A DNA stretch of 62,927 nucleotides, counting the filler, from Octopus bimaculoides (Eukaryota): the NCBI RefSeq assembly GCF_001194135.2. It is 8 parts of 6 records of this genome, joined end to end, with 100 filler letters (N's around TTAATTAATTAA, not from the genome) between each part and the next. Parts side by side here need not be neighbours in the genome. Positions count along the whole stretch, not along the records: positions 42,186 to 52,992 come from NC_068986.1; 7 more parts are not named here. One strand, given 5' to 3'. Position numbers and translations under genes: made by a program. Shown piece after piece: positions 41,461 through 53,132 of this stretch. Position 1 is the first letter of the stretch. The number at the start of each line of letters is the position of its first letter. The notes below the pieces were generated by a model. It saw only the letters and a list, made by a program, of their open reading frames with translations, made no database searches and was not told the DNA's origin.

Positions 41461-42357
41461 TTGGGAAATCTCATTGCAATATTTTTCTTGTCTCATGATT
41501 TACGTTATCGTTTTCGTAACTGTTCACTCGTTGTTTTGTGTAAAATCCCCACGGTCCCCGTCTAATGTATTGTCCCCTATACGCCGGCACTAGCGGCCAA
41601 TATATTAAATTATTATTATTAGTAGTAGTAGTAGTAGTAGCAGCAGCAGTTTTTCTTGCTGCGGTTGCCTTTGCCGCAGTCATTGTTTTTTTTGTGGTTT
41701 GAGAAAAAGAAAGAGGAGAATGTAGTGTTGAAGAGGAGGGGAGAAAGAGAAGGACAGAAAATAATGAAGAGAAAGGAAGAAATTTATGCAGACGCATCTC
41801 TCGTGTGGTAGGAGTAAATGATAGAAAAATAGAAGAGTGTAAAACAAGTTACTCTGAGTTGAAAAGTGTAGCAAAATCTAAACAAAAATAATGTCATTCA
41901 CAATTTATAATTAGAACGGAGAGCCATGAATGGTAATCAGCGTTGCTCGAGGAGTAAATATAATAAATAATATACAAAAGGAGGTACAAATCAAGTCGAT
42001 ACACTCATGTACGTTCACTCATCCTGCATGACACAGACTGACATATGCATAATCATGCACAAAATCATATGCAGTAATTATCAGANNNNNNNNNNNNNNN
42101 NNNNNNNNNNNNNNNNNNNNNNNNNNNNNTTAATTAATTAANNNNNNNNNNNNNNNNNNNNNNNNNNNNNNNNNNNNNNNNNNNNCTCTTTATATATATA
42201 TATATATATATATATAACTTGGACAGGTATTTTTTTTACCATAGACCATAATCGACCAAGCCAGGTGAGTGATATTAAATAGACAGAAACTGTAAAGAAC
42301 TACCTTTTTGTATCTGGTATGCAATATACTTTATGTGAATTCGTGTGTTGAAATAAA

Positions 42358-43335
42358 TTTTGTTGTGTCTAGGGAGATACAATATTATTAACATACGCAC
42401 TGGTTCAATTCCACTCCTTTATTATTAGTCAATTGGTTAAATATCCAGCTAACTAATCGATTGCTTGTTTAATTTGGTTAATCAGAAATCATTTGCTTTG
42501 TTTTTATTTGTCAAAAATCTTTCGTTATTACTTGCAACTTTTCAATGACTTTCACCTTAGTCCATTACGGAGGCTGCGTTTGTCTGCTTAAGACCTTGAT
42601 TCGAGCGTGCATGTATGTGCGCACCAGTGTGCACGTGTGCTTGCGTATGTATATATGTATGTGTTCTACGTATTCATGTGTCGGTGTGTACGTACTTGTG
42701 TGTTTGTATGTATGTGTGAGTGTGTCTGTGCGTGTACTTCTGCTTCCTTGTGCATGGGTGCTTGAGTGTGCCTAGGCGTATGAGTGTGTGCGTATGCACG
42801 TCCACCTGTTTTGTGTGCATATGTGCCTATACATGTGTGTGTATGCGTGTGTGTGTAGAGTGTGTGTGCATAGTCATGTGTTTCAGGCACACGTGTACAC
42901 ACAGACTTATACGCATAGGCACACTCAAGCATGCATGCACAAGGAAGCAGAAGTACACTTACAAATACACATACATACATACATACATACATACATACAT
43001 ACATAAGCACAAGCACGCGCACACTCTGACGAATGAATACGTAGAATACATACATACATACATACACAAGCACACGCGCACACTGGCACGTACACACACG
43101 CTCAAAACAAGGTCTCAAGCAGACAAACGCAACCTCCGTAACGGACTAGGACGAAAGTCATTGAAAAGTTTGCAAGTAGCAACAAGAGAGCTTTGACAAA
43201 TAAAAACAAAACAAATATTTAAACAAATTAAACAAGCAATCGATTAGTTAGTTGGATATCCAAGTGACTAATAATATAGGAGTGGAATTGAACCTGTGCG
43301 TGTGTTAATAATATTGGCATAATGACACAACAAAA
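42358..43335. repeat. Long foldback palindrome (arms about 450 bp, spacer about 70 bp)
   Basis: 42358-42815 matches the reverse complement of 42883-43335. Examples: GGTTCAATTCCACTCC/GGAGTGGAATTGAACC, TAACTAATCGATTGCTTGTTTAATTTG, GTGTACTTCTGCTTCCTTGTGCATG. Confidence 0.9.
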
Positions 43336-43459
43336 CTATGTAGAAGCCAATCAGATAGATCTTACTTGTCATATGTTGTGCTATACCGATTGTTTGAGAA
43401 TTAAATAAATGGGTACATACGTCTGTCGGATACTCAACCACTCGTTAATTTGATGAGAC

Positions 43460-43745
43460 AGCTCAGCTTATTGAACAACTGAATACATATTGCTGAAACG
43501 ACAGTGGAATTTGAACTCCGGACCCAAAGAGCCGAAACAAATACCGCACAGCACCCAGACTGACGTTCCTACAGTTCCGCCATGTTCCGTCCTGGATTGT
43601 TACTATTTTTTTAAAGATCCCCGAAAGCATGAAAGACAAAGTTGACCTCACCGGTATTTGAACTTAGAGTGCAGAGAATCAGAACAAATACACCGAGACA
43701 TTATATCCGATGCTCTAACATCTCTGCCAATTCACTGCCTAATAC
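43460..43745 (-). mobile_element. Two adjacent tRNA-type SINE fragments (family B at about 43600-43745)
   Basis: GGAATTTGAACTC box-B complements at about 43506 and about 43655. GAAAGCATGAAAGACAAAGTTGACCTC is a family B motif. Confidence 0.65.
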
Positions 43746-45128
43746 GATCGACTGCTTCCTCTCTTAAAATTTTTAATCGTGTGTTTAAATTAGGAATCAT
43801 TATTAACAAGGCCAGTGTACTGGGGGAATCAGTAGAGTGTCTGACTTACGATATTTAATTACAGTTATGAGGTCATATCCTACATTGGGTTAGCTATCTT
43901 TAGTCCTCTGGGGATCGATACCAGTCAGATACTAGGGATTGGTTTAACCGATTATAATCTCTCCTAATCAGCTTTCGATTGTTTTTTTATTTGCCGATTG
44001 TCTATGAAAAGTCATTAATTAGTATTATAATTATTATTATTAGTAGTATTAGTATTTTAATGTCCGTGGAACGTTAAATAAGAAATTAGTCGAGTCAAAT
44101 AATGAGTTTTTAATAATGTGGGCGGAACGTTTTCGGTTGTTGTTCTTATTCTTAGTTTAATAACATTTATTTTTAGTTATATTTATTGTTGACTTATTTA
44201 CAGTTAGTGTTCAGGGGAGATAAAGAGACCAAATAAATAAATAAATGAATAAATAAATAAATAAAAGTGGGAAGGAAAGACTGCATGAGGCACCCCGTTT
44301 GAGTTATGTAGGCGGGGTTAGCGAATTCTCTCGTTCACTGACCCCAGTAACCTGTTTAGTTTTGTTTCCATGCACACTTAACCCAATCAAACGACCTCCA
44401 TTTCTGTAGATGCACAGTAACATTGACTGTTGTTACAAGTCCTTCTCTCTTTCCGTGAGTTAATCACTAATTGCCTTGCAGATTGTAATTAAATGTCTAT
44501 GATCACTCATAGATGTTATTGCATTAATATTTCATAATACGTCTACTTCCCTCCAATTGAACGCTTCCCTGCTCTTTATTTAGCTTAAAAGCTAAAACTA
44601 GAACCAAAACCATCTCGACTCTTCCCCCCTCTCTCTTTCTTTCTCTTTCTCTTTCTCTCTGTCTTATGTTAATGGTAAGAACAGCAGTGGCGATGTAACG
44701 GCAATGTGACGATGTGGCACAGACTCTTCTAGTACAAGCAGAACTGTGGAAGGTAGAGGTGGTGATGGTGGTGTCGGTGTTGTTGTGACGATAGTATGGT
44801 GGTGGTGGTGGTGGTGGTGGTGGTGAAGGTAGTTGTGATGGTGAAGAGAGTAGTGAATGACTGTGGTGGTGGTAGTGGCGATAGTGTTGATAGGTTGTAA
44901 TGGTGATTAAGGTAATGGTATTCATAGTGTGGACGACAGTTGTGGTGATGGCAGCCGTGTTGCTGCTGCTGTTGTTGTTGTGGTAGGCAATATATAGGTG
45001 ATGGTGCTCCTGGTGGTGATAGTCGTTGCGATGGTGGTGACGGCGGCGGGCTGGTTTGCAGTGGTGGTAGTTGCATTGAAAAAGCGAAGATAGCATTGGT
45101 TGGCAGCGATGTAGATAGATAGATATAT

Positions 45129-45209
<81 letters not shown>

Positions 45210-48079
45210 TGGGGTAGGTAAGGTAAATGGGTGAGAAGTAACAGACATGATGCTCGGGAGGGCGGAGGCGGGGGCATTGACAATCTTCAATTGACTGGAC
45301 GTAGTCAGCACGCGAACTCTTTATGTCAAGTTCTGGAGATCGGAGTTCTGGCGGGGGGCGTGTTTCTTCAAACGGCTTTTTCTGTGGTTTGTTGCTTTAG
45401 TTATAGTCGTTTTTGTTGTCGTTGCCGTTGTTGTTGTTGTTGTTGTTGTCTGGGCGTTCTTGGCCAGCCCGTGTTAAACACTGTTCACGTTATTGCGATG
45501 ATGACGATAACGAAGATGACTATGATGATGATGATGGCATTCAAAGAAGGTATGTTGGTGGTGGTGTTGGTGTTGGTGGTGGTGTGCCAGTTTACTGCTG
45601 ATTAAAGGATATTTCATTGTCAAACATCACGAATCGAAGATCTATCGTGCCAAATGACCCTAACATGTGTCCACTGAAGCCCGTACAAGCGTTGAAGAAC
45701 AACAGATGATTAAGTTGGCTTCTTGATAGTGGAAAGAGAGTTTGATCGAAATAGAGAGTGAGGAAGTGGGGCAGGAAGAATAGGTTTAGGTAGGCGCATG
45801 GTGTGGTTGAGAGAATAAACGAAAAGCATGTAGAAACAGCAACAATATAAATGAAATATCAATTGTTTAAATTATTTGTTTGCTATTTTCAGCTTTTATT
45901 TGTGAAACAAAGAAAAATTATTCAATATTTTTATATTTTTAAAGACATTTTTTATTTGTTTGTTTTCTTTTACTCCCTTCCTTCACTCTTCTTCTTCTTC
46001 TCTCCCACCTCTTCGCAATTCTTGTCAAATTTTCTGATTAGAATCTAAATTGTTAACTTACATCTCCAATTTCGATTGATGCTAGCGAATCGATGCGTGC
46101 CCCGATGTCATAAGTATCACCCTCCGCCTTTCTCTTATACAATGAATAGCTTTCCGCATGCACGATTCGAAAATGTGGTAGAGCAGTCATATATTTATCT
46201 GGCGATGCACCAGCATATTTGGTCTTTCTTCGAATGAAACAGCATAGATGGGGTAGTGGTCTTATTGTTATTATTATTAATTACATTTTGTTCTTTAAAG
46301 CTACGGGTCATCACGAGCTGCCATATATCTCTATAGAATTGTAAAATAATTGACTAAGGTATAGAAAAATGAAATTAAACGAAATTTTATTGATAAAACT
46401 CGAGAGAAACGACCCCGTTTCGCTATGAGCCCCTCTAATCCTGAAGATAAAAATCGGATGATCAGCAGCAATTGTATTCCCTTAGTTCCAAATGGTTGGC
46501 CACCAAACTGGAATCCCTTGCTTATCAATATTAACCATTTATCTACAATACTAATAGAAACGATTAGAATTCCCTGTGATAAATGACATGTTATGTAAAA
46601 TAACAACAACACATGTTAAATATGCCGAATCATGTTTCGTATGTTCATTGATTTCATGCATTCAAAAATAGCGAATTATAAATATTTAGTCACATATGAC
46701 TACATCAGACGACACAGAGTCCAGTGCTATTTGTTTCAATAATTCACCCGCTATAATTTTTATCGTCTTTCTTTAAAAGTAAAATACATATTTAGTCATA
46801 TAGATTAATTTGATATGTAAAGTTTGGACGCTCGAGTTAGTTGGTACATACAATGATAGAAAAAGCGATTAGATTATTTCATGATAGGATAGATAACACA
46901 TTTGGTGCTTAACGGTTGTGATTTCAGATCTCACCGAGATCGGCTATGAATTTCGTCCCCCTTTCCCTGATAGCTTAAAAAAAAAAGAACAGTTTATATG
47001 AGAGTTCTAGAATGTTTTTCTTTCCAAATAGAGGCCTTTTGGTTTTTTTTTTTGCAACAACACCAACAGCACTTCAAGCATGGTAAGCTGCTTAAAATAA
47101 AATGCAGCTTATATCAAGCATTGACTGATATACCGTTTAATATCCATTTTAATTCACTTGGAAAAGAGTATAAATGGTGTAAGTGAAGTTAACAACTTAC
47201 TTTTTTCTACTAAAGGGGGAAAAAAGATAGAAAACAAGGGATAGAATCATTTCACTTATAATGAATTGTCAAAATACCCGATAACTAATTTAAATCAAAT
47301 CAACAGATTTGATTTAAATTAATTACAAATTACTCAAAACTTTAAATGAGGTTTTCTTCCTTAGTATTGCTGAAGTTTAAAAAGGAACCTTATCTTTACC
47401 AACATAATAAACTATTTAAATTAGCAAGGAAGTTTAAAGCAAACAAACAGGAAGAGAACTAGAAAATTAAGGAGCTAACTACTTAAATTAAGTGGATCTG
47501 CAATCAGAAATCGAAAGCAGGCGCGAACTGTTTTGTCAAAATCTTATTGCTCTGTCACGGTCGTCACCATTCACGGAAAAATAACAACTTTACATAGATG
47601 TATAAAATGTTTAGGAGAGAGAAGAAAACAATAAGTGAGGTTTCTGTGATGTTCACACATTTAAGAATGGTTTTAGTAACTGGGAATCAAACCCCAGGAG
47701 CGAAAACAAAAGATAGAATTAATTATAAAATAAAATGAAATTATACTGTTGTTTAATTGACTTTTCCCGCAAAAGTTTACTATAAAGAGAAGTAAACTAT
47801 TTGTTCCAATACAAACCTCAATGTTTGGCTTATTCCTGATTACAATAACGAAAATACTTCGAGCTGTATAGTTTACCTACCATTGTCATTGGCAAGCAGC
47901 ATTTATTAATACTGACACTATTTCACCTAAAGCAAGAATGGAGGATCGAGGGTAGATGTTCATGTTTTTTTTTTCTAAATATCATTACTGAACTTTTTCT
48001 TATTTCATAGTCACGTTTACTCTGTTATTGATACTGTTTTTTTTTTATTTCGACTATCTTTTGTGATATGAATTTTGTT

Positions 48080-48664
48080 TTAGAGCAAATTTCTGAGATC
48101 AGCTGGTAAAGGAAGATCAATGAATGGCTGCACTCCTGAAGCTATAGCAAATTTGTCGGCTCTAGTCTTTATGAATATAAGGAGTCGATTGCTTCTAAAT
48201 CGATTAACAGTGGATCGGTCAGAGTCTTTTTCCGCTAATAGGGTATCGTAGCGTAGCCACGAATAATTATTTGGATAGGTATTCGTATACAAATAGATCC
48301 GGCAATTCAGCAACGTAGCGAGAGCTTGTAAGATAACATCTAAATCGATTGTTTTCCCAGAGCTAAGATTTTTCAATACAGTGTTAGGATTCATGCGATG
48401 CCAGTTGAAATTGAGGTTTCGAAAGATGTCCACAAATGTTGTTAGCAATAGACGGAATTTGAGGAAATGATCTTCGTTTCCCGTCAAAATTTTGCTCACA
48501 ACGCGAAATAGTGAATTCACGCCGGTGACCTCGGCATACGTAACCGTTCTGTCCGATAAATCTATACGAGTGCGTCCAATTGTAGGGCATATAATGAAGT
48601 CAGTGAATTGTTTTCTTTTTCCTCTCCGATTTCTCGCTGTTTGATAAGGTGTAGTAGTATCCAT
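48080..48664 (-). CDS. 194-aa OTU-fold protein lacking catalytic Cys/His (candidate pseudo-deubiquitinase)
   Basis: Uninterrupted high-complexity ORF. EVTGVNSLFRVVSKILTGNEDHFLKFR aligns to the OTU Cys-loop xGDGNCLFRAxSxxLxGxExxHxxxR. ILQALATLLNCRIYLY aligns to the helix/strand EIxALAxLLxxxIxxY. IFIKTRADKFAIA aligns to the His-loop IxxxxxxxHF/Yxxx. Confidence 0.75.
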   Translation of the reverse strand: MDTTTPYQTARNRRGKRKQFTDFIICPTIGRTRIDLSDRTVTYAEVTGVNSLFRVVSKILTGNEDHFLKFRLLLTTFVDIFRNLNFNWHRMNPNTVLKNLSSGKTIDLDVILQALATLLNCRIYLYTNTYPNNYSWLRYDTLLAEKDSDRSTVNRFRSNRLLIFIKTRADKFAIASGVQPFIDLPLPADLRNLL

Positions 48665-48682
48665 CGATTTAAAGAATGAAAT

Positions 48683-48851
48683 CTGTAGTTTCTCGCAATT
48701 ATTTAAAATAATAATAATAATAGATTACGAAGCTTTGTTTAAAAAAAAAATTAACCTTTGAAAACTACTGATCTTGATGCAAACAGCATCAACAACCTTC
48801 AAGAATTATTACTTTAAACAAAACTGTTGCTGTGGTCGAAATTTCGCTTAC
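48683..48851 (-). other. Putative 169-nt intron upstream of the OTU-like ORF
   Basis: Consensus donor CCGAG|GTAAGC at 48852/48851 and acceptor CTACAG| at 48683, 18 nt before the ATG. The interior is AT-rich. Confidence 0.45.
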
Positions 48852-48883
48852 CTCGGCAAAGATTCAAAAAGCAGGTTTGTCTT

Positions 48884-48950
48884 TATGACGTCATAGTGAT
48901 CAGTTTCTCCTTGTAACATTTTAATTAATAAAGGAAGCTGATAGATTGGC
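48884..48950 (-). promoter_or_regulatory. Candidate promoter: CRE palindrome plus CCAAT box
   Basis: TATGACGTCATA at 48884-48895 (core TGACGTCA 48886-48893) and GCCAATC on the minus strand at 48950-48944, just upstream of the putative first exon. Confidence 0.45.
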
Positions 48951-49056
48951 TTGAAATTTAAACCTAAGCTTTATAAATAATGATTTCTTATATTGGTACA
49001 CGGAGTATCGTTGATTTACTCGATTTCCTCCTTACTCTAGTGGAATATGTAAGATT

Positions 49057-49272
49057 GGTTTCAAATTTTGTCGCAAGATTTGCAATTTGGTGGTGGTGGT
49101 GGTGGTAAGTTGATCACATCGACACCAGTGTTCAACTGGTACTTATTTTATCGACTCCGAAAGAATGAAAGACAAAGTTGACTCCGGCAGAACTTGAATT
49201 CAGAACTTAAAGCCGGACGAAATACCGTTAAGAATTTTGTCCGGTGTGCTAATGATTCTGCCAGTTTGTTGC
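49057..49272 (-). mobile_element. SINE family B
   Basis: GGTTTCAAATTTTG...ACTGGTACTTATTTTATCGACTCCGAAAG...GAATTCAGAAC...GATTCTGCCAG. Confidence 0.85.
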
Positions 49273-49952
49273 TTTAGTAGAGTGTAAGATATTAAGTGAA
49301 GTCGATCCTGGTGGTTTTGTAACTTGAGAATATAGAAATACGAAAGAAATTCACCTTGCGCTTTTCTATTTCTAGTAAGTCACCACTTACCAAACTATTA
49401 TAAGTGATTTCGATTTGTATTTTTTTTATCGTGGTGTAGTCCCGGGTCACGTCTGATTAAGCAGATCTATGATAAAAAGATATTGCAACATCGACTATTT
49501 CGTCCTATTTCTTTTCGATATACAATATATTTAAGATCATATTCATGTTTTTAAGGTGGTAGGGTGTAATTTAAGATATATTGAACTGCTATTTCGAGCA
49601 ACAACGTAGAATTGTGATGACGAACCTGTACTCCGCATGTTGGCTGTCACATGCCATAAATTTTTAGGTAATACGTAATGGACTTTGAAAAAGAATTTCT
49701 TGCAATGTAGAAAGTTTACTTAAAACCAAAATACATGCCTACACGCAAGTGACACTGTAATATCAGGATTATTAAAGAAACTAAAATTTCAGCATGTTGG
49801 GCTAAAAGGTTTTGCCATCGTCGGCGTAAAGTCTCCTCCATTCTGTATTTATAATTGCTTGCATTCAACGTTATGTTGTATCTTCATGCAAAGAAATTTA
49901 GAATTACCTCACAAATTGCGCAAGATCTCTGTTGCTATGGGCAACTCTGACT

Positions 49953-50160
49953 CTTTCTTTTGGCTTCAGTCAGCCGACGGCAGCTATGCTGGGAAACCGT
50001 CTTAAAGGGATTTTAGTAAGTAAAATCGACTCCTGTATCTATTAAAAAAAATTCTGGTGCATATTTCATCGGCCACTATTTCGCTGAACCACTAAATTAC
50101 AGCGCGTAAACAAGCAAACATGGCGCCAAGCGGTGATACGCAAAGACTACACACACACAT
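49953..50160 (-). mobile_element. SINE family A, 3' part, diverged
   Basis: CAGTCAGCCGACGGCAGCTATGCTGG...GCTGAACCACTAAATTAC...CGTAAAC. Confidence 0.6.
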
Positions 50161-50483
50161 GTATGTGTGTGTGCGTGTGTGTGTGTGTGTATAAATATAT
50201 ATATATATATATATATTGTTGTACTTGGGGATGGTCATGTTGCCAGTTTAGCCAATAAAAACACACGCACTGTATATTTGGTGTTANNNNNNNNNNNNNN
50301 NNNNNNNNNNNNNNNNNNNNNNNNNNNNNNNNNNNNNNNNNNNNNNNNNNNNNNNNNNNNNNNNNNNNNNNNNNNNNNNNNNNNNNNNNNNNNNNNNNNN
50401 NNNNNNNNNNNNNNNNNNNNNNNNNNNNNNNNNNNNNNNNAGAATGCAACAGAAATATAGTTTTAATATAAAAATTACTTCAA

Positions 50484-52735
50484 TTATACATGAACCTCAG
50501 TCGTTTTGGTTTCATGGCGAACTCGTGCAATATTGTCATGCAGCTCCTTCTTGTTGTCCAAGTCGTTCAAAATGCTTTCCTCGAAGGAAATACGACCCAG
50601 TGAAGACAGCCGTTTTTGGGCCATTGTGCTTCTCAGATATGAGCGGATTCTATCCACCTTTGGGAAGCTTCTCTCATTAGCGACTGATGTTAAGGGGATG
50701 GTCAGCACTAGCTTAATTAGTTTAATGAATTCTGGTATAGCGGAAGTCAATTCCAATTTATACAGTAATTCTAAAATGGAATTGATTGACTTGCACTTTT
50801 TTGAAATCACTGGCAAAATATATATATATATATATATATANNNNNNNNNNNNNNNNNNNNNNNNNNNNNNNNNNNNNNNNNNNNNNNNNNNNNNNNNNNN
50901 NNNNNNNNNNNNNNNNNNNNNNNNNNNNNNNNNNNNNNNNNNNNNNNNNNNNNNNNNNNNNNNNNNNNNNNNNNNNNNNNNNNNNNNNNNNNNNNNNNNN
51001 NNTATTAGCTCGTTCACTAAGCTCTTACAGTCAACAATATATGGATACTAGTTTTCTAGAGAGTCTATATGTTGTATGGGAAACGAATTAGCAAACTCTT
51101 CAAACTTATTAATGTCTAGTAATTCAAAAAATGCATACTTCTGAATGCCAGAAAATCTCTGTCATAAGGACATTAGAATGTTATCAATTATTTCAAAATA
51201 AGTAGTTTTGTAATTAATTTGTGAACCTCTGACTCTTTATCTAGGAGGAGGATCGGACTCATCTGCCTATTCAATGACAGTAGCTGTATCGCGCAGAATG
51301 TTTTTATGTTAGTCTTTACGATAACCTTCAACACAATGAATGAAGTGATTTACTTTACTCTGACCATGCTTTATGTCGAGTAGCTTACACTGTAGGACAT
51401 CAAAGACATTTCCAGCCAGGGAAAGAATGTTATGAAAGCAATTGATAAAAATATGAATGTGAAATCATTCAATTTTGGCAATAGATTGTCTGTTTGACAT
51501 GTGTAGCTTCATCCCAAGAGCCTAGAATACTTGTGAAGGCATTTTTCAAGCTTTCATGCAATAGTTTTATGGATGACACAGTTCTTGATCTATAGCACCT
51601 TATTGTTTCGCACAGTGATGGAATACTGACATTAAATTGCTTGAAAACGTTTTTCTGCTCGGTACTGGAAGATGTAAATTTACTAAATGAGAAAAAAAAA
51701 ACAAAAACATTTTTACTCCACTTACCTTCTCGGCACTTTTACTCAAGACTAAGTTAAGTTTATGCGCACAGCAGTTAATGAAATGCGCATGTTTAAATCC
51801 TTTATCCTTAGCTTACTCTGTACTCCGTTTAACGTTCCTACCATTACCATTACAGCTGCTCCGTTGTAAGTCTGGCTCACTAATTTATCTGTAGCGTCAC
51901 TGAAGGAGTTCAACGCAGTTGCGATCACATCGGACAGTCGTGTAGCACTTTTATCATCACTGACTTCATAGAATCCAAGAAATCGTTAACATGTTTTGTT
52001 TTCATATACATATCTTATGATCGACAGTTGGGCATGCATTGCACAGTCTGTGGTTTCGTCGGCTTGTACAGATATAAGCGGAACTTTATCAATTTCGCTT
52101 TTAATTTCATCAGAGATGACATTTCCAATCGCTTGTATTAGGTAATTTCGTATTGTACTTGAGATTCATGAAAACTGTTTTGACCCTTCTTTAGTAGAAA
52201 GTCTAGAAGAAAACACTCTGTCAATTTCAGCAAAGGGTTGCAATAATTCACGGTAATTTCGTCTAAGGCTGTCACTTCCTTCATCATGTCCACGTAAAGG
52301 CAACTCTTGTTTACACAGGTATAACACTGCATTTGTTGGCTGCTTTAAATATTGTCTATTTTCTTCAGCTACTTTGCAATGCTGTTCTTTTTCCAGTTTA
52401 GCAGACACACTAGTAGCTGTCACAGACTCACTGATTTACTGTGATACTTACGGCCACTCAGGATGTTTTTATAACTGTTATAACCTCCATCTGTCCACGA
52501 CTGATTAGCTTTTGGCTGAAACAACAAACATGGCCAGCAGTTGAGTTTCTCTGTGCGCTACTTGCACAAAAACAATCAATCTGTTCATGCCATATCTGAA
52601 ATGTTCGAGTTCCAACTTTAGTTTTCAATAAAGTCGTTGGCCTACCTGCTCGAAGAATTTCACATTTTGCCGCAATATTCCTAGCCCAAAATGCCTTATT
52701 TTTTTAATATCATTTTTATATCTTTCTCCATTTCT
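50484..52735 (-). mobile_element. hAT transposase pseudogene (ZMYM1-like/DUF4371 type)
   Basis: N-terminal CWPCLLF...WTDGGY (TTF-type Zn finger), then LYLCKQELPLRGHDE...NYRELL, and C-terminal dimerisation domain LIKLVLTIPLTSVANERSFPKVDRIRSYLRSTMAQKRLSSL. Many stops and an N gap; TIRs not visible. Confidence 0.88.
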
Positions 52736-53132
52736 AAGTTAAGGGTAAGAATAAGGCAACCATGCAAAACACAACTGATCTTTACACACAGACGCACAGA
52801 ATAACAACAATCAAATAATGAAAGCGGAGTGCACAACAAACATCAGCGATCTGACTGTCGCCTGTACTCTTGACAAGACATGCCAGTTAGTCTTCTACAC
52901 CTACCAGGCTCGTTCGTATTAGCCCGAGTTTCCGGTTAATTTTTCGTTCCTTTAAGAATATTGTAGAACAGAAACTTTTCATAGATTGGAGTNNNNNNNN
53001 NNNNNNNNNNNNNNNNNNNNNNNNNNNNNNNNNNNNTTAATTAATTAANNNNNNNNNNNNNNNNNNNNNNNNNNNNNNNNNNNNNNNNNNNNATATATAT
53101 ATATATATATATATGCAGATAGATAGATAGAT

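What the first reader, a model, noticed from the sequence alone, without database searches (positions are those of the whole stretch)
48080..48664. Intact stand-alone OTU-fold protein with a fully substituted catalytic site (candidate pseudo-deubiquitinase)
Seen: this is the only long stop-free, non-repetitive ORF in 63 kb, while every transposon ORF around it is riddled with stops. Established: OTU proteases use a GDGNC Cys-loop and a C-terminal His-loop. Seen by manual alignment: the Cys-loop reads TGVNS (Ser51, codon TCA at 48514-48512; the Asp is also missing), the His position is Lys171, and the usual GxWG Trp is absent. The surrounding structural motifs (LFRxxSxxLxGxExxH..R; LQALATLLNCRIYLY; WxRY) are kept. 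TCA is two changes from a Cys codon and A-to-I editing cannot restore Cys. A basic RNRRGKRK segment at residues 11-18 resembles a nuclear localisation signal. Inference: a retained, catalytically dead OTU acting as a ubiquitin binder or scaffold, possibly a cephalopod-specific gene or one domesticated from a Helitron-type OTU domain. Known pseudo-OTUs such as OTULINL/FAM105A have different architectures.
Basis: partly seen in the sequence, partly recalled or inferred. Interest (0 to 1): 0.75.

Follow-up and report, generated by a model that had tools for sequence, protein, structure and literature searches.

The report
Conserved catalytically dead OTU-fold gene
This is a real, conserved cephalopod gene for a small protein that keeps the fold of an OTU deubiquitinating protease but has lost all three catalytic residues; its closest active relatives are OTU domains carried by Mutator-like (MULE) transposons.

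Summary
The 194-codon ORF at 48080-48664 (minus strand) is present as described. It is a gene, not a chance ORF or a decaying transposon fragment.

- **Orthologue.** A 93%-identical orthologue lies in a locus whose flanks also align. The ORF is better conserved than those flanks and has no indels.
- **Second clade.** A 46%-identical clade, found in cuttlefish reads among others, has dN/dS 0.057.
- **OTU homology.** Direct Pfam and PDB sequence searches fail. Homology is established through intermediates: an exhaustive phmmer search reaches Pfam-valid OTU proteins, and hhalign of the dead-only profile against the active-only profile gives 98% probability (E 1e-13). All top 50 Foldseek PDB hits to the AlphaFold model are OTU domains.
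- **Catalytic site.** In every member the triad reads Ser/Lys/Ala (Ser at the third position in one orthologue) instead of Cys/His/acid. The Ser and Lys codons change synonymously between loci.
- **Origin.** The nearest active relatives are OTU domains fused or adjacent to MULE transposases, not Helitron proteins. No transposase remnant adjoins the gene.
- **Regulatory signals.** A TGACGTCA site sits 170-232 bp upstream of the ATG in all loci examined.

Ubiquitin binding, nuclear localisation and expression remain untested. This is a new member of the pseudo-deubiquitinase kind, of moderate interest.

The parts
48080..48664 (-). Complete single-exon coding sequence, 194 aa plus TAA stop
   Evidence: It is 95.6% nt-identical to the sister-species locus with no indels.
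48125..48535 (-). OTU-fold core, about residues 44-180
   Evidence: hhalign covers residues 33-143. AlphaFold pLDDT is about 80 over residues 50-145, with 43 over 151-160 and 79 and 68 for 161-180. The top 50 Foldseek PDB hits are all OTU domains.
48512..48514 (-). Ser51 codon (TCA) at the catalytic Cys position
   Evidence: The codon is TCG or TCC in the second clade.
48152..48154 (-). Lys171 codon (AAA) at the catalytic His position
   Evidence: The codon is AAG in L005.
48146..48148 (-). Ala173 codon (GCT) at the position of the third triad residue (Glu in NHYE relatives)
48611..48634 (-). Basic segment RNRRGKRK (residues 11-18) within a predicted disordered N-terminal tail
   Evidence: Clade B has RKRNKH or RKRDKH here. 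pLDDT is below 50 for residues 1-43.
48104..48118 (-). C-terminal DLPLP motif (residues 183-187), invariant in both clades
48886..48893 (.). TGACGTCA palindrome (CRE/ATF-type site), 222-229 bp upstream of the ATG
   Evidence: It is the only copy in the window and occurs at a similar distance upstream in all loci examined (in one search the only two copies in L005 both lie there).
48665..48960 (-). Upstream region alignable with the sister species; putative promoter and 5' UTR
   Evidence: 90.5% identity. In clade B, conservation upstream begins at the TGACGTCA site.
48044..48049 (-). AATAAA, putative polyadenylation signal about 30 nt after the stop codon
   Evidence: Read from the sequence. 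AATAAA is also conserved downstream in clade B.

Best explanation
Window 48080-48664 (minus strand) is a single-exon gene of a cephalopod lineage. It encodes a protein of about 190 aa with three parts:
- a disordered, basic N-terminal tail;
- an OTU-fold domain;
- a short conserved C-terminal DLPLP motif.

The OTU domain descends from the type of OTU domain carried by MULE (Mutator-like) DNA transposons. It now stands alone, with its own conserved promoter-proximal TGACGTCA site and AATAAA signal.

All three triad positions are replaced: Cys to Ser51, His to Lys171 and the acidic residue to Ala173. The conserved Trp of active relatives is also gone. The protein therefore cannot work as a cysteine isopeptidase.

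**Shown:** the gene is real; it has the OTU fold; the triad is lost in every member; it is under purifying selection; its closest active relatives are transposon OTU domains.

**Inferred:** it acts by binding rather than by cleavage. It could hold a ubiquitin-like modifier, or the former substrate of the transposon OTU, as an adaptor or competitor. The basic tail suggests it may act in the nucleus.
For: **The gene is real**
- The sister-species contig aligns over 1357 nt at 90.7% identity.
- Identity is 95.6% in the ORF with 0 indels, against 90.5% and 85.7% in the flanks with 41 gap columns. Fisher p = 1.6e-7.
- dN/dS is 0.40 for the close pair (p = 0.024).
- dN/dS is 0.057 between two clade-B species (dS 0.95, p = 7e-26). 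Differences by codon position are 16/9/64.
- Between the two clades, synonymous sites are saturated, yet the proteins are 46% identical.

**OTU homology**
- phmmer against 1.84 billion representative proteins finds P0005 (E 2.6e-5) and P0006 (E 3.3e-4). Both pass the Pfam OTU gathering score.
- hhalign of the dead-only profile against the active-only profile gives 98.1% probability, E 1.2e-13.
- The top 50 Foldseek PDB hits are all OTU domains. The best is OTUD1, E 1.2e-4, TM 0.59.

**Triad loss**
- The Cys and His positions read Ser and Lys in all members examined; the third position is Ala, or Ser in P0002.
- The Ser codon is TCA, TCG or TCC, and the Lys codon is AAA or AAG, depending on the locus.

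**Transposon origin**
- P0021 carries a Pfam MULE domain and an OTU domain in one protein.
- In L012 a MULE gene lies directly upstream of the OTU gene.
- A profile of the dead members alone finds no OTU in the PDB. The family is therefore closer to these transposon OTU domains than to any OTU with a solved structure.

**Stand-alone status**
- No transposase remnant lies beside the gene in the window or in L005.

**Regulatory signals**
Against: - The direct Pfam OTU hit is below threshold (12.2 bits against 23.3), and phmmer against PDB sequences finds nothing.
- The structure model has only moderate confidence (mean pLDDT 63). It was built from an alignment that includes true OTU proteins, so the fold match is not independent of the sequence link.
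- There is no evidence of transcription. All public contigs that carry the gene are colinear with genomic DNA.
- dN/dS for the window's own close pair is only moderately below 1 and rests on 26 differences.
- Binding of ubiquitin is an inference. The one characterised OTU-class pseudo-DUB, FAM105A, does not bind ubiquitin.
- Copy number in the window's genome could not be measured directly.
Confidence: 0.75

Rival explanations
1. The protein is a domesticated repressor. The dead OTU domain competes with the active OTU domain of MULE transposons for the same host or transposon partner, and so dampens transposition. This would be a dominant-negative derivative of a transposon protein. It is a specific version of the binding model, not a contradiction of it.
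For: The closest active relatives are MULE-linked OTU domains. All catalytic residues are lost while the fold is retained. Purifying selection has lasted a long time.
Against: MULE-OTU elements have not been shown to exist in cephalopod genomes; the active relatives come from unlabelled metagenome contigs. No interaction data exist. The function of OTU domains in transposons is itself unknown (PMC2836005).
Confidence: 0.1
2. The protein is a re-tooled hydrolase. Ser51 and Lys171, at the old Cys and His positions, form a Ser-Lys dyad, so the protein is still an enzyme with a changed chemistry or substrate.
For: Ser and Lys are kept in both clades through synonymous codon changes. Ser51 lies at the N-terminus of the helix where the OTU nucleophile sits, and Lys171 lies in the strand of the His loop. 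Several proteins once labelled pseudo-DUBs later proved active (PMC10919355; PMC12037411).
Against: About 46% of all positions are identical between the clades, so conservation of these two residues is not significant on its own. The Asp of the Cys loop and the conserved Trp are also lost. No Ser-Lys OTU is known to me. The side-chain geometry could not be measured with these tools.
Confidence: 0.06
3. The ORF is an accessory gene of a low-copy transposon, or a young pseudogene that has not yet acquired stops, and not a host gene.
For: Its relatives are transposon proteins. A decayed hAT transposase lies 1.8 kb upstream on the same strand. The gene has no intron.
Against: dN/dS is 0.057 at dS 0.95. 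The frame is intact at nearly the same length (188 aa in the three clade-B species/variants examined, 194 aa in the two clade-A loci). The flanks are orthologous in the sister species. In clade B, conservation stops at the edges of the transcription unit. Only three protein clusters were found among about 15 billion proteins. No transposase remnant adjoins the gene.
Confidence: 0.04
4. The ORF is a chance open frame, and the resemblance to OTU is spurious.
For: The Pfam hit has E 0.26. No direct hit was found in PDB sequences.
Confidence: 0.01

Closest known systems
FAM105A/OTULINL, the OTU-class pseudo-deubiquitinase of vertebrates
   Same: It has an OTU fold with a disrupted catalytic triad, is retained as a gene and lacks isopeptidase activity (PMC7862380).
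   Different: FAM105A is a paralogue of OTULIN. It keeps the His (triad Asp139/His350/His352), carries a membrane-localisation motif and sits at the ER. The present protein has Ser/Lys/Ala at the triad positions, a basic N-terminal tail and a DLPLP C-terminus. It is related to transposon OTU domains. Profile searches of the PDB reached OTUD5, OTUD1, OTUD3 and nairovirus OTU domains, not OTULIN-type chains.
OTU domains fused or adjacent to MULE (Mutator-like) transposases (P0021, P0008, P0007, P0010/L012)
   Same: These are the closest sequence relatives: 31% identity over the core (E 3e-09 in the pairwise BLASTP) and hhalign E 1.2e-13. They share the LFRxxSxxLTGxE, ASLLxCxIYxY and WLR motifs.
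   Different: They have an intact GDGNC loop, the TWxT Trp and NHYEPV, and they are linked to a DDE transposase. The window gene has none of these and stands alone.
OTU domains of Ginger1 transposases and animal Helitron proteins
   Same: These are transposon-borne OTU cysteine protease domains (PMC2836005).
   Different: No direct comparison was possible, because no Ginger or Helitron sequences were at hand. The relatives actually retrieved carry MULE domains, not integrase or Rep/helicase domains.
Cellular OTUD-type deubiquitinases (OTUD1, OTUD3, OTUD5)
   Same: These are the best structural matches to the model (TM 0.54-0.60 normalised to the target). A profile that includes the active intermediates reaches them (E 1.2e-5).
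   Different: They are active Cys/His enzymes. Sequence identity is 16-18% in the structural alignments. A profile of the dead members alone does not reach them.

Membership tests
OTU superfamily (Pfam PF02338) | Direct match to the Pfam OTU model at or above the gathering score | tested here: not met
   12.2 bits against a cut-off of 23.3, E 0.26. P0002 and P0003 give no OTU hit.
OTU superfamily (Pfam PF02338) | Significant homology to bona fide OTU domains by transitive or profile-profile search | tested here: met
   phmmer gives E 2.6e-5 and 3.3e-4, in a library of 1.84 billion proteins, to proteins that pass the Pfam OTU cut-off. hhalign gives 98.1% probability, E 1.2e-13.
OTU superfamily (Pfam PF02338) | OTU fold | tested here: met
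   The AlphaFold core has pLDDT of about 80. The top 50 Foldseek PDB hits are all OTU domains (also with the shallower model). Confidence is moderate, and the alignment used for the model included true OTU proteins.
Active OTU deubiquitinase | Catalytic Cys in the Cys loop | tested here: not met
   Ser51 (TCA) in the window; Ser in all five other loci examined.
Active OTU deubiquitinase | Catalytic His in the His loop | tested here: not met
   Lys171, or Gly177 under the alternative alignment. There is no His in either case.
Active OTU deubiquitinase | Third triad residue (Asp/Asn/Glu, two residues after the His) | tested here: not met
   Ala173; Ser in P0002; Ala in clade B.
Active OTU deubiquitinase | Cleavage of ubiquitin or Ubl conjugates | not testable with these tools
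   Requires recombinant protein and assays.
Pseudo-deubiquitinase (pseudoenzyme of a DUB fold) | DUB fold, catalytic residues absent, gene retained under purifying selection | tested here: met
Pseudo-deubiquitinase (pseudoenzyme of a DUB fold) | Demonstrated lack of activity and a non-catalytic function | not testable with these tools
   Biochemical work is needed.
MULE-transposon OTU proteins | OTU domain fused or adjacent to a MULE DDE transposase inside a mobile element | tested here: not met
   tblastn with the MULE parts of P0021, P0007, P0008 and P0010 finds nothing beside the ORF in the window piece or in L005.
FAM105A/OTULINL orthologue | Closest similarity to OTULIN-type OTU domains | tested here: not met
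   No OTULIN or FAM105A chain appears among the PDB sequence hits or the top 50 structural hits.
Helitron or Ginger1 OTU | Closest similarity to the OTU domains of those elements | not tested
The literature only was consulted.

The most novel reading that the evidence does not exclude
The replacement of Cys/His by Ser51/Lys171, kept in both clades through synonymous codon turnover, is not a loss of function but a change of chemistry. On this reading the OTU fold works as a Ser-Lys dyad hydrolase, or forms a stable ester-trapped complex with a ubiquitin-like modifier, in a cephalopod-lineage gene domesticated from a transposon.
Probability: 0.06. Interest if true: 0.85.

Novelty: new member of a known kind. 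Interest (0 to 1): 0.45.

Why it matters
Pseudo-deubiquitinases are a small and poorly understood class, and the OTU family has few clear examples.

This gene would be an independent case. It is a stand-alone OTU fold with all three triad positions replaced. It has been held under strong purifying selection across deeply diverged cephalopod lineages. It most likely derives from a transposon-borne OTU domain whose own role in transposition is unknown.

It is small and single-exon, so it should be easy to express and test. It could serve two purposes: showing what a dead OTU fold does, and giving a handle on what transposon OTU domains bind. It also adds to the list of lineage-restricted, transposon-derived genes in cephalopods.

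Tried and rejected
**Direct searches that found nothing useful**
- Pfam scan of the ORF: only OTU at E 0.26.
- phmmer of the ORF against PDB sequences: no hit.
- Profile of the three dead members against the PDB: no hit.
- Exact look-up of the window protein on public contigs: nothing on record.
- Third homology search, using the clade-B protein: no new family members.

**A hit that was rejected**
- P0004 (968 aa, E 7.6e-8) consists of tandem 60-residue repeats matched nine times over 40 residues. I rejected it as a score inflated by the repeats.

**Context searches that were negative**
- Synteny between the window piece and the 20-kb clade-B locus L005: nothing beyond the ORF itself.
- MULE transposase remnants near the ORF: none.
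- Evidence of splicing or poly(A) tails in the Logan contigs: all contigs are colinear with genomic DNA, so there is no expression evidence either way.
- Rfam and tRNA scans of the piece and of L005: empty.

**Attempts to identify the source species**
- Paper searches for the read-set accessions identified only ERR12945500, which is Acanthosepion esculentum.
- The species of the window, of SRR11869391/4, of ERR14857105 and of ERZ21867824 remain unknown.

**Unverified gene-structure features**
- A possible 5'-UTR intron in the window (GAG|GTAAGC at about 48852, CAG at about 48684) and an acceptor-like CAG directly before the ATG in clade B are unverified.
- The indels in the conserved upstream block argue that this block is non-coding.

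Full report
**1. The observation**

The piece 42186-52992 contains one long, non-repetitive open frame, at 48080-48664 on the minus strand. It runs 194 codons from ATG to TAA, or 214 codons from stop to stop. The other ORFs of comparable length lie in microsatellite or low-complexity DNA at 42.2-45.6 kb, or run across stretches of N.

In 1000 dinucleotide-matched simulations of the 4.2-kb neighbourhood, the longest open frame averaged 97 codons and never exceeded 189. GC rises to about 0.40 inside the ORF, against about 0.30 on either side.

- Ser51 is TCA at 48514-48512.
- Lys171 is AAA at 48154-48152.
- Residues 11-18 read RNRRGKRK.
- TCA cannot become a Cys codon by one change or by A-to-I editing. 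This follows from the genetic code.

Upstream on the same strand, at 50487-52703, lie fragments of a hAT-type transposase. They match DUF4371 weakly and the hAT dimerisation domain at E 9.5e-8. They are broken by stops, frameshifts and two N runs.

**2. It is a gene under selection**

*The close orthologue.* The large protein collection holds a 93%-identical protein, P0002, on 1395-nt contigs from two read sets.
- The whole contig aligns to window 47601-48960 at 90.7% identity, so the locus is orthologous and not a dispersed copy.
- The ORF is 95.6% identical with no indel. The flanks are 90.5% and 85.7% identical, with 41 gap columns. Fisher p = 1.6e-7.
- Nei-Gojobori dN/dS is 0.40 (15 non-synonymous and 11 synonymous differences, p = 0.024).

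*The second clade.* An exhaustive phmmer search of 1.84 billion representative proteins added P0003, at 46% identity.
- Its cluster holds variants from several read sets, and P0020 lies on a 406-kb contig.
- Under the standard code these ORFs are 188 aa long. The longer database versions read through a TGA stop.
- Between L003 and L005, dS is 0.95, dN is 0.054 and omega is 0.057 (p = 7e-26). Differences by codon position are 16/9/64.
- Between the two clades, synonymous sites are saturated (pS about 0.9) while pN is 0.39.

*Species.* One read set that carries the clade-B protein, ERR12945500, is described in a preprint as short reads of the cuttlefish Acanthosepion esculentum. The family is therefore present in cephalopods. 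I could not identify the species of the window.

**3. It is an OTU-fold protein**

Direct tests fail:
- The Pfam OTU hit scores 12.2 bits against a cut-off of 23.3.
- phmmer against PDB sequences finds no hit.
- A profile of the dead members alone finds nothing in the PDB.

The link comes through intermediate sequences:
- The single-sequence phmmer search reaches P0005 (E 2.6e-5) and P0006 (E 3.3e-4). Both pass the Pfam OTU gathering score and carry GDGNC and NHYEPV.
- I compared a profile built only from dead members (A5) with a profile built only from active, Pfam-valid OTU proteins (A4). The result was 98.1% probability, E 1.2e-13, over 106 columns.
- An AlphaFold model built on 14 sequences has mean pLDDT 63. 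Blocks covering residues 51-140 average 72-86. Its top 50 Foldseek PDB hits are all OTU domains. The best are OTUD1 (E 1.2e-4, TM 0.59) and OTUD3 (TM 0.60). A shallower model gave the same picture.
- Viral structure hits are also largely OTU-bearing proteins.

The fold result is not fully independent of the sequence link, because the alignment used for the model included true OTU proteins.

**4. The active site is gone in every member**

The alignment with the active relatives shows the following:

| Active relatives | Window protein (clade A) | Clade B |
|---|---|---|
| GDGNC (Cys loop) | TGVNS | T-DNS |
| Trp of TWxT | Ile106 | Cys or Ala |
| NHYE (His loop) | DKFA | HKFA or QKFA |

The triad Cys/His/Glu has therefore become Ser51/Lys171/Ala173. 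In P0002 the third position is Ser instead of Ala.

The model places Ser51 at the start of a helix and Lys171 in the second strand of a hairpin. This matches OTU topology. An ungapped alternative would put Gly177 at the His column, which also gives no His.

The Ser codon is TCA, TCG or TCC, and the Lys codon is AAA or AAG, depending on the locus. The residues are therefore kept at the protein level. However, 46% of all positions are conserved between the clades, so this has no statistical weight on its own.

Framework motifs are retained: LFR, LTGxE, Arg71, Ala116, Leu119 and Trp136. Features specific to the dead family are the block TF(V/I)DIFRNL(N/D)F(N/R)W, a basic N-terminal tail and an invariant C-terminal DLPLP.

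**5. Origin**

- The best active relatives share a segment before the OTU domain.
- P0021 has a Pfam MULE transposase domain (43 bits) and an OTU domain (54 bits) in one protein.
- P0007, P0008 and P0010 carry the same inter-domain region.
- In L012 a 388-aa MULE gene lies directly upstream of the OTU gene P0010.
- The literature at hand lists OTU domains in Ginger1 and Helitron elements, and Ulp1 domains in Mutator elements (PMC2836005).
- No MULE remnant adjoins the ORF in the window or in L005.

**6. Transcription-unit signals**

- TGACGTCA occurs once in the whole window, 222-229 bp upstream of the ATG.
- The only two copies in the 20.6-kb locus L005 lie 169-192 bp upstream of its ATG.
- L001 and L003 have one copy each, at -232 and -180.
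- In clade B, upstream alignability between species begins at this site. It continues to the ATG with indels, which fits a promoter and 5' UTR.
- AATAAA follows the stop codon in both clades.
- No contig shows splicing or a poly(A) tail, so expression remains unproven.

**7. Mechanism**

The protein cannot act as a cysteine isopeptidase. The best-supported reading is a pseudoenzyme that works by binding. The target is unknown. Ubiquitin or a ubiquitin-like modifier is the obvious candidate. However, the characterised OTU pseudo-DUB FAM105A binds neither ubiquitin nor LUBAC (PMC7862380), so this step is an inference.

The basic tail suggests nuclear import, and the DLPLP motif suggests a partner-docking site. 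Neither was tested.

The variants I considered are a dominant-negative regulator of MULE-OTU transposons and a Ser-Lys re-tooled hydrolase. Some proteins once labelled pseudo-DUBs later proved to be active (PMC10919355).

**8. Verdict**

The gene is a new member of the pseudo-deubiquitinase kind, with a probable MULE-transposon origin. Interest is moderate.

Noticed in passing
window 50487-52703 (minus strand): A decayed hAT-type transposase. Fragments match DUF4371 (52169-52423, weak) and the hAT dimerisation domain (within 50487-51017, E 9.5e-8). They are split over several frames by stops. Two N runs interrupt the region, at 50287-50440 and 50841-51002. The remnant ends 1.8 kb upstream of the OTU-like gene on the same strand.
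   Followed up: partly
window 42186-45600: Microsatellite and low-complexity DNA (ACAT, AGAG, TAGA, TGG and GTT arrays). It produces long spurious ORFs on both strands.
   Followed up: partly
L003:1244-1309 and L005:10568-10594: The database proteins P0003, P0017 and P0020 carry false C-terminal extensions because the gene caller read the TGA stop as Trp. Under the standard code the ORFs are 188 aa. P0018 is an N-terminally frameshifted or extended call of the same gene.
   Followed up: yes
window 48004-48018 (minus strand); L003:1412-1426: A 15-nt motif, AAACGTGACTAYGAA, lies shortly after AATAAA in both the window and the cuttlefish-clade loci, even though synonymous sites are saturated between them. 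It is only partly kept in L001 and L005. It may be part of a 3'-end element, or it may be coincidence.
   Followed up: partly
L012:618-2690; protein P0021: MULE (Mutator-like) transposase followed by, or fused to, an active OTU domain, on unlabelled metagenome contigs. The transposon paper consulted lists Ulp1, not OTU, for Mutator elements, so this pairing may be under-described.
   Followed up: partly
L005:9301-9480 and the 3' ends of L006-L011: Repeat-like sequence (for example ...ACCCTTGGGACAGGTATGAA...) flanks the clade-B gene, and the short-read contigs end there. ARAGORN finds no tRNA gene in L005.
   Followed up: partly
window 48384-48590 (minus strand, other frame): A 68-aa ORF lies inside the OTU-like coding sequence in another frame. 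No evidence suggests it is anything but a by-product.
   Followed up: no
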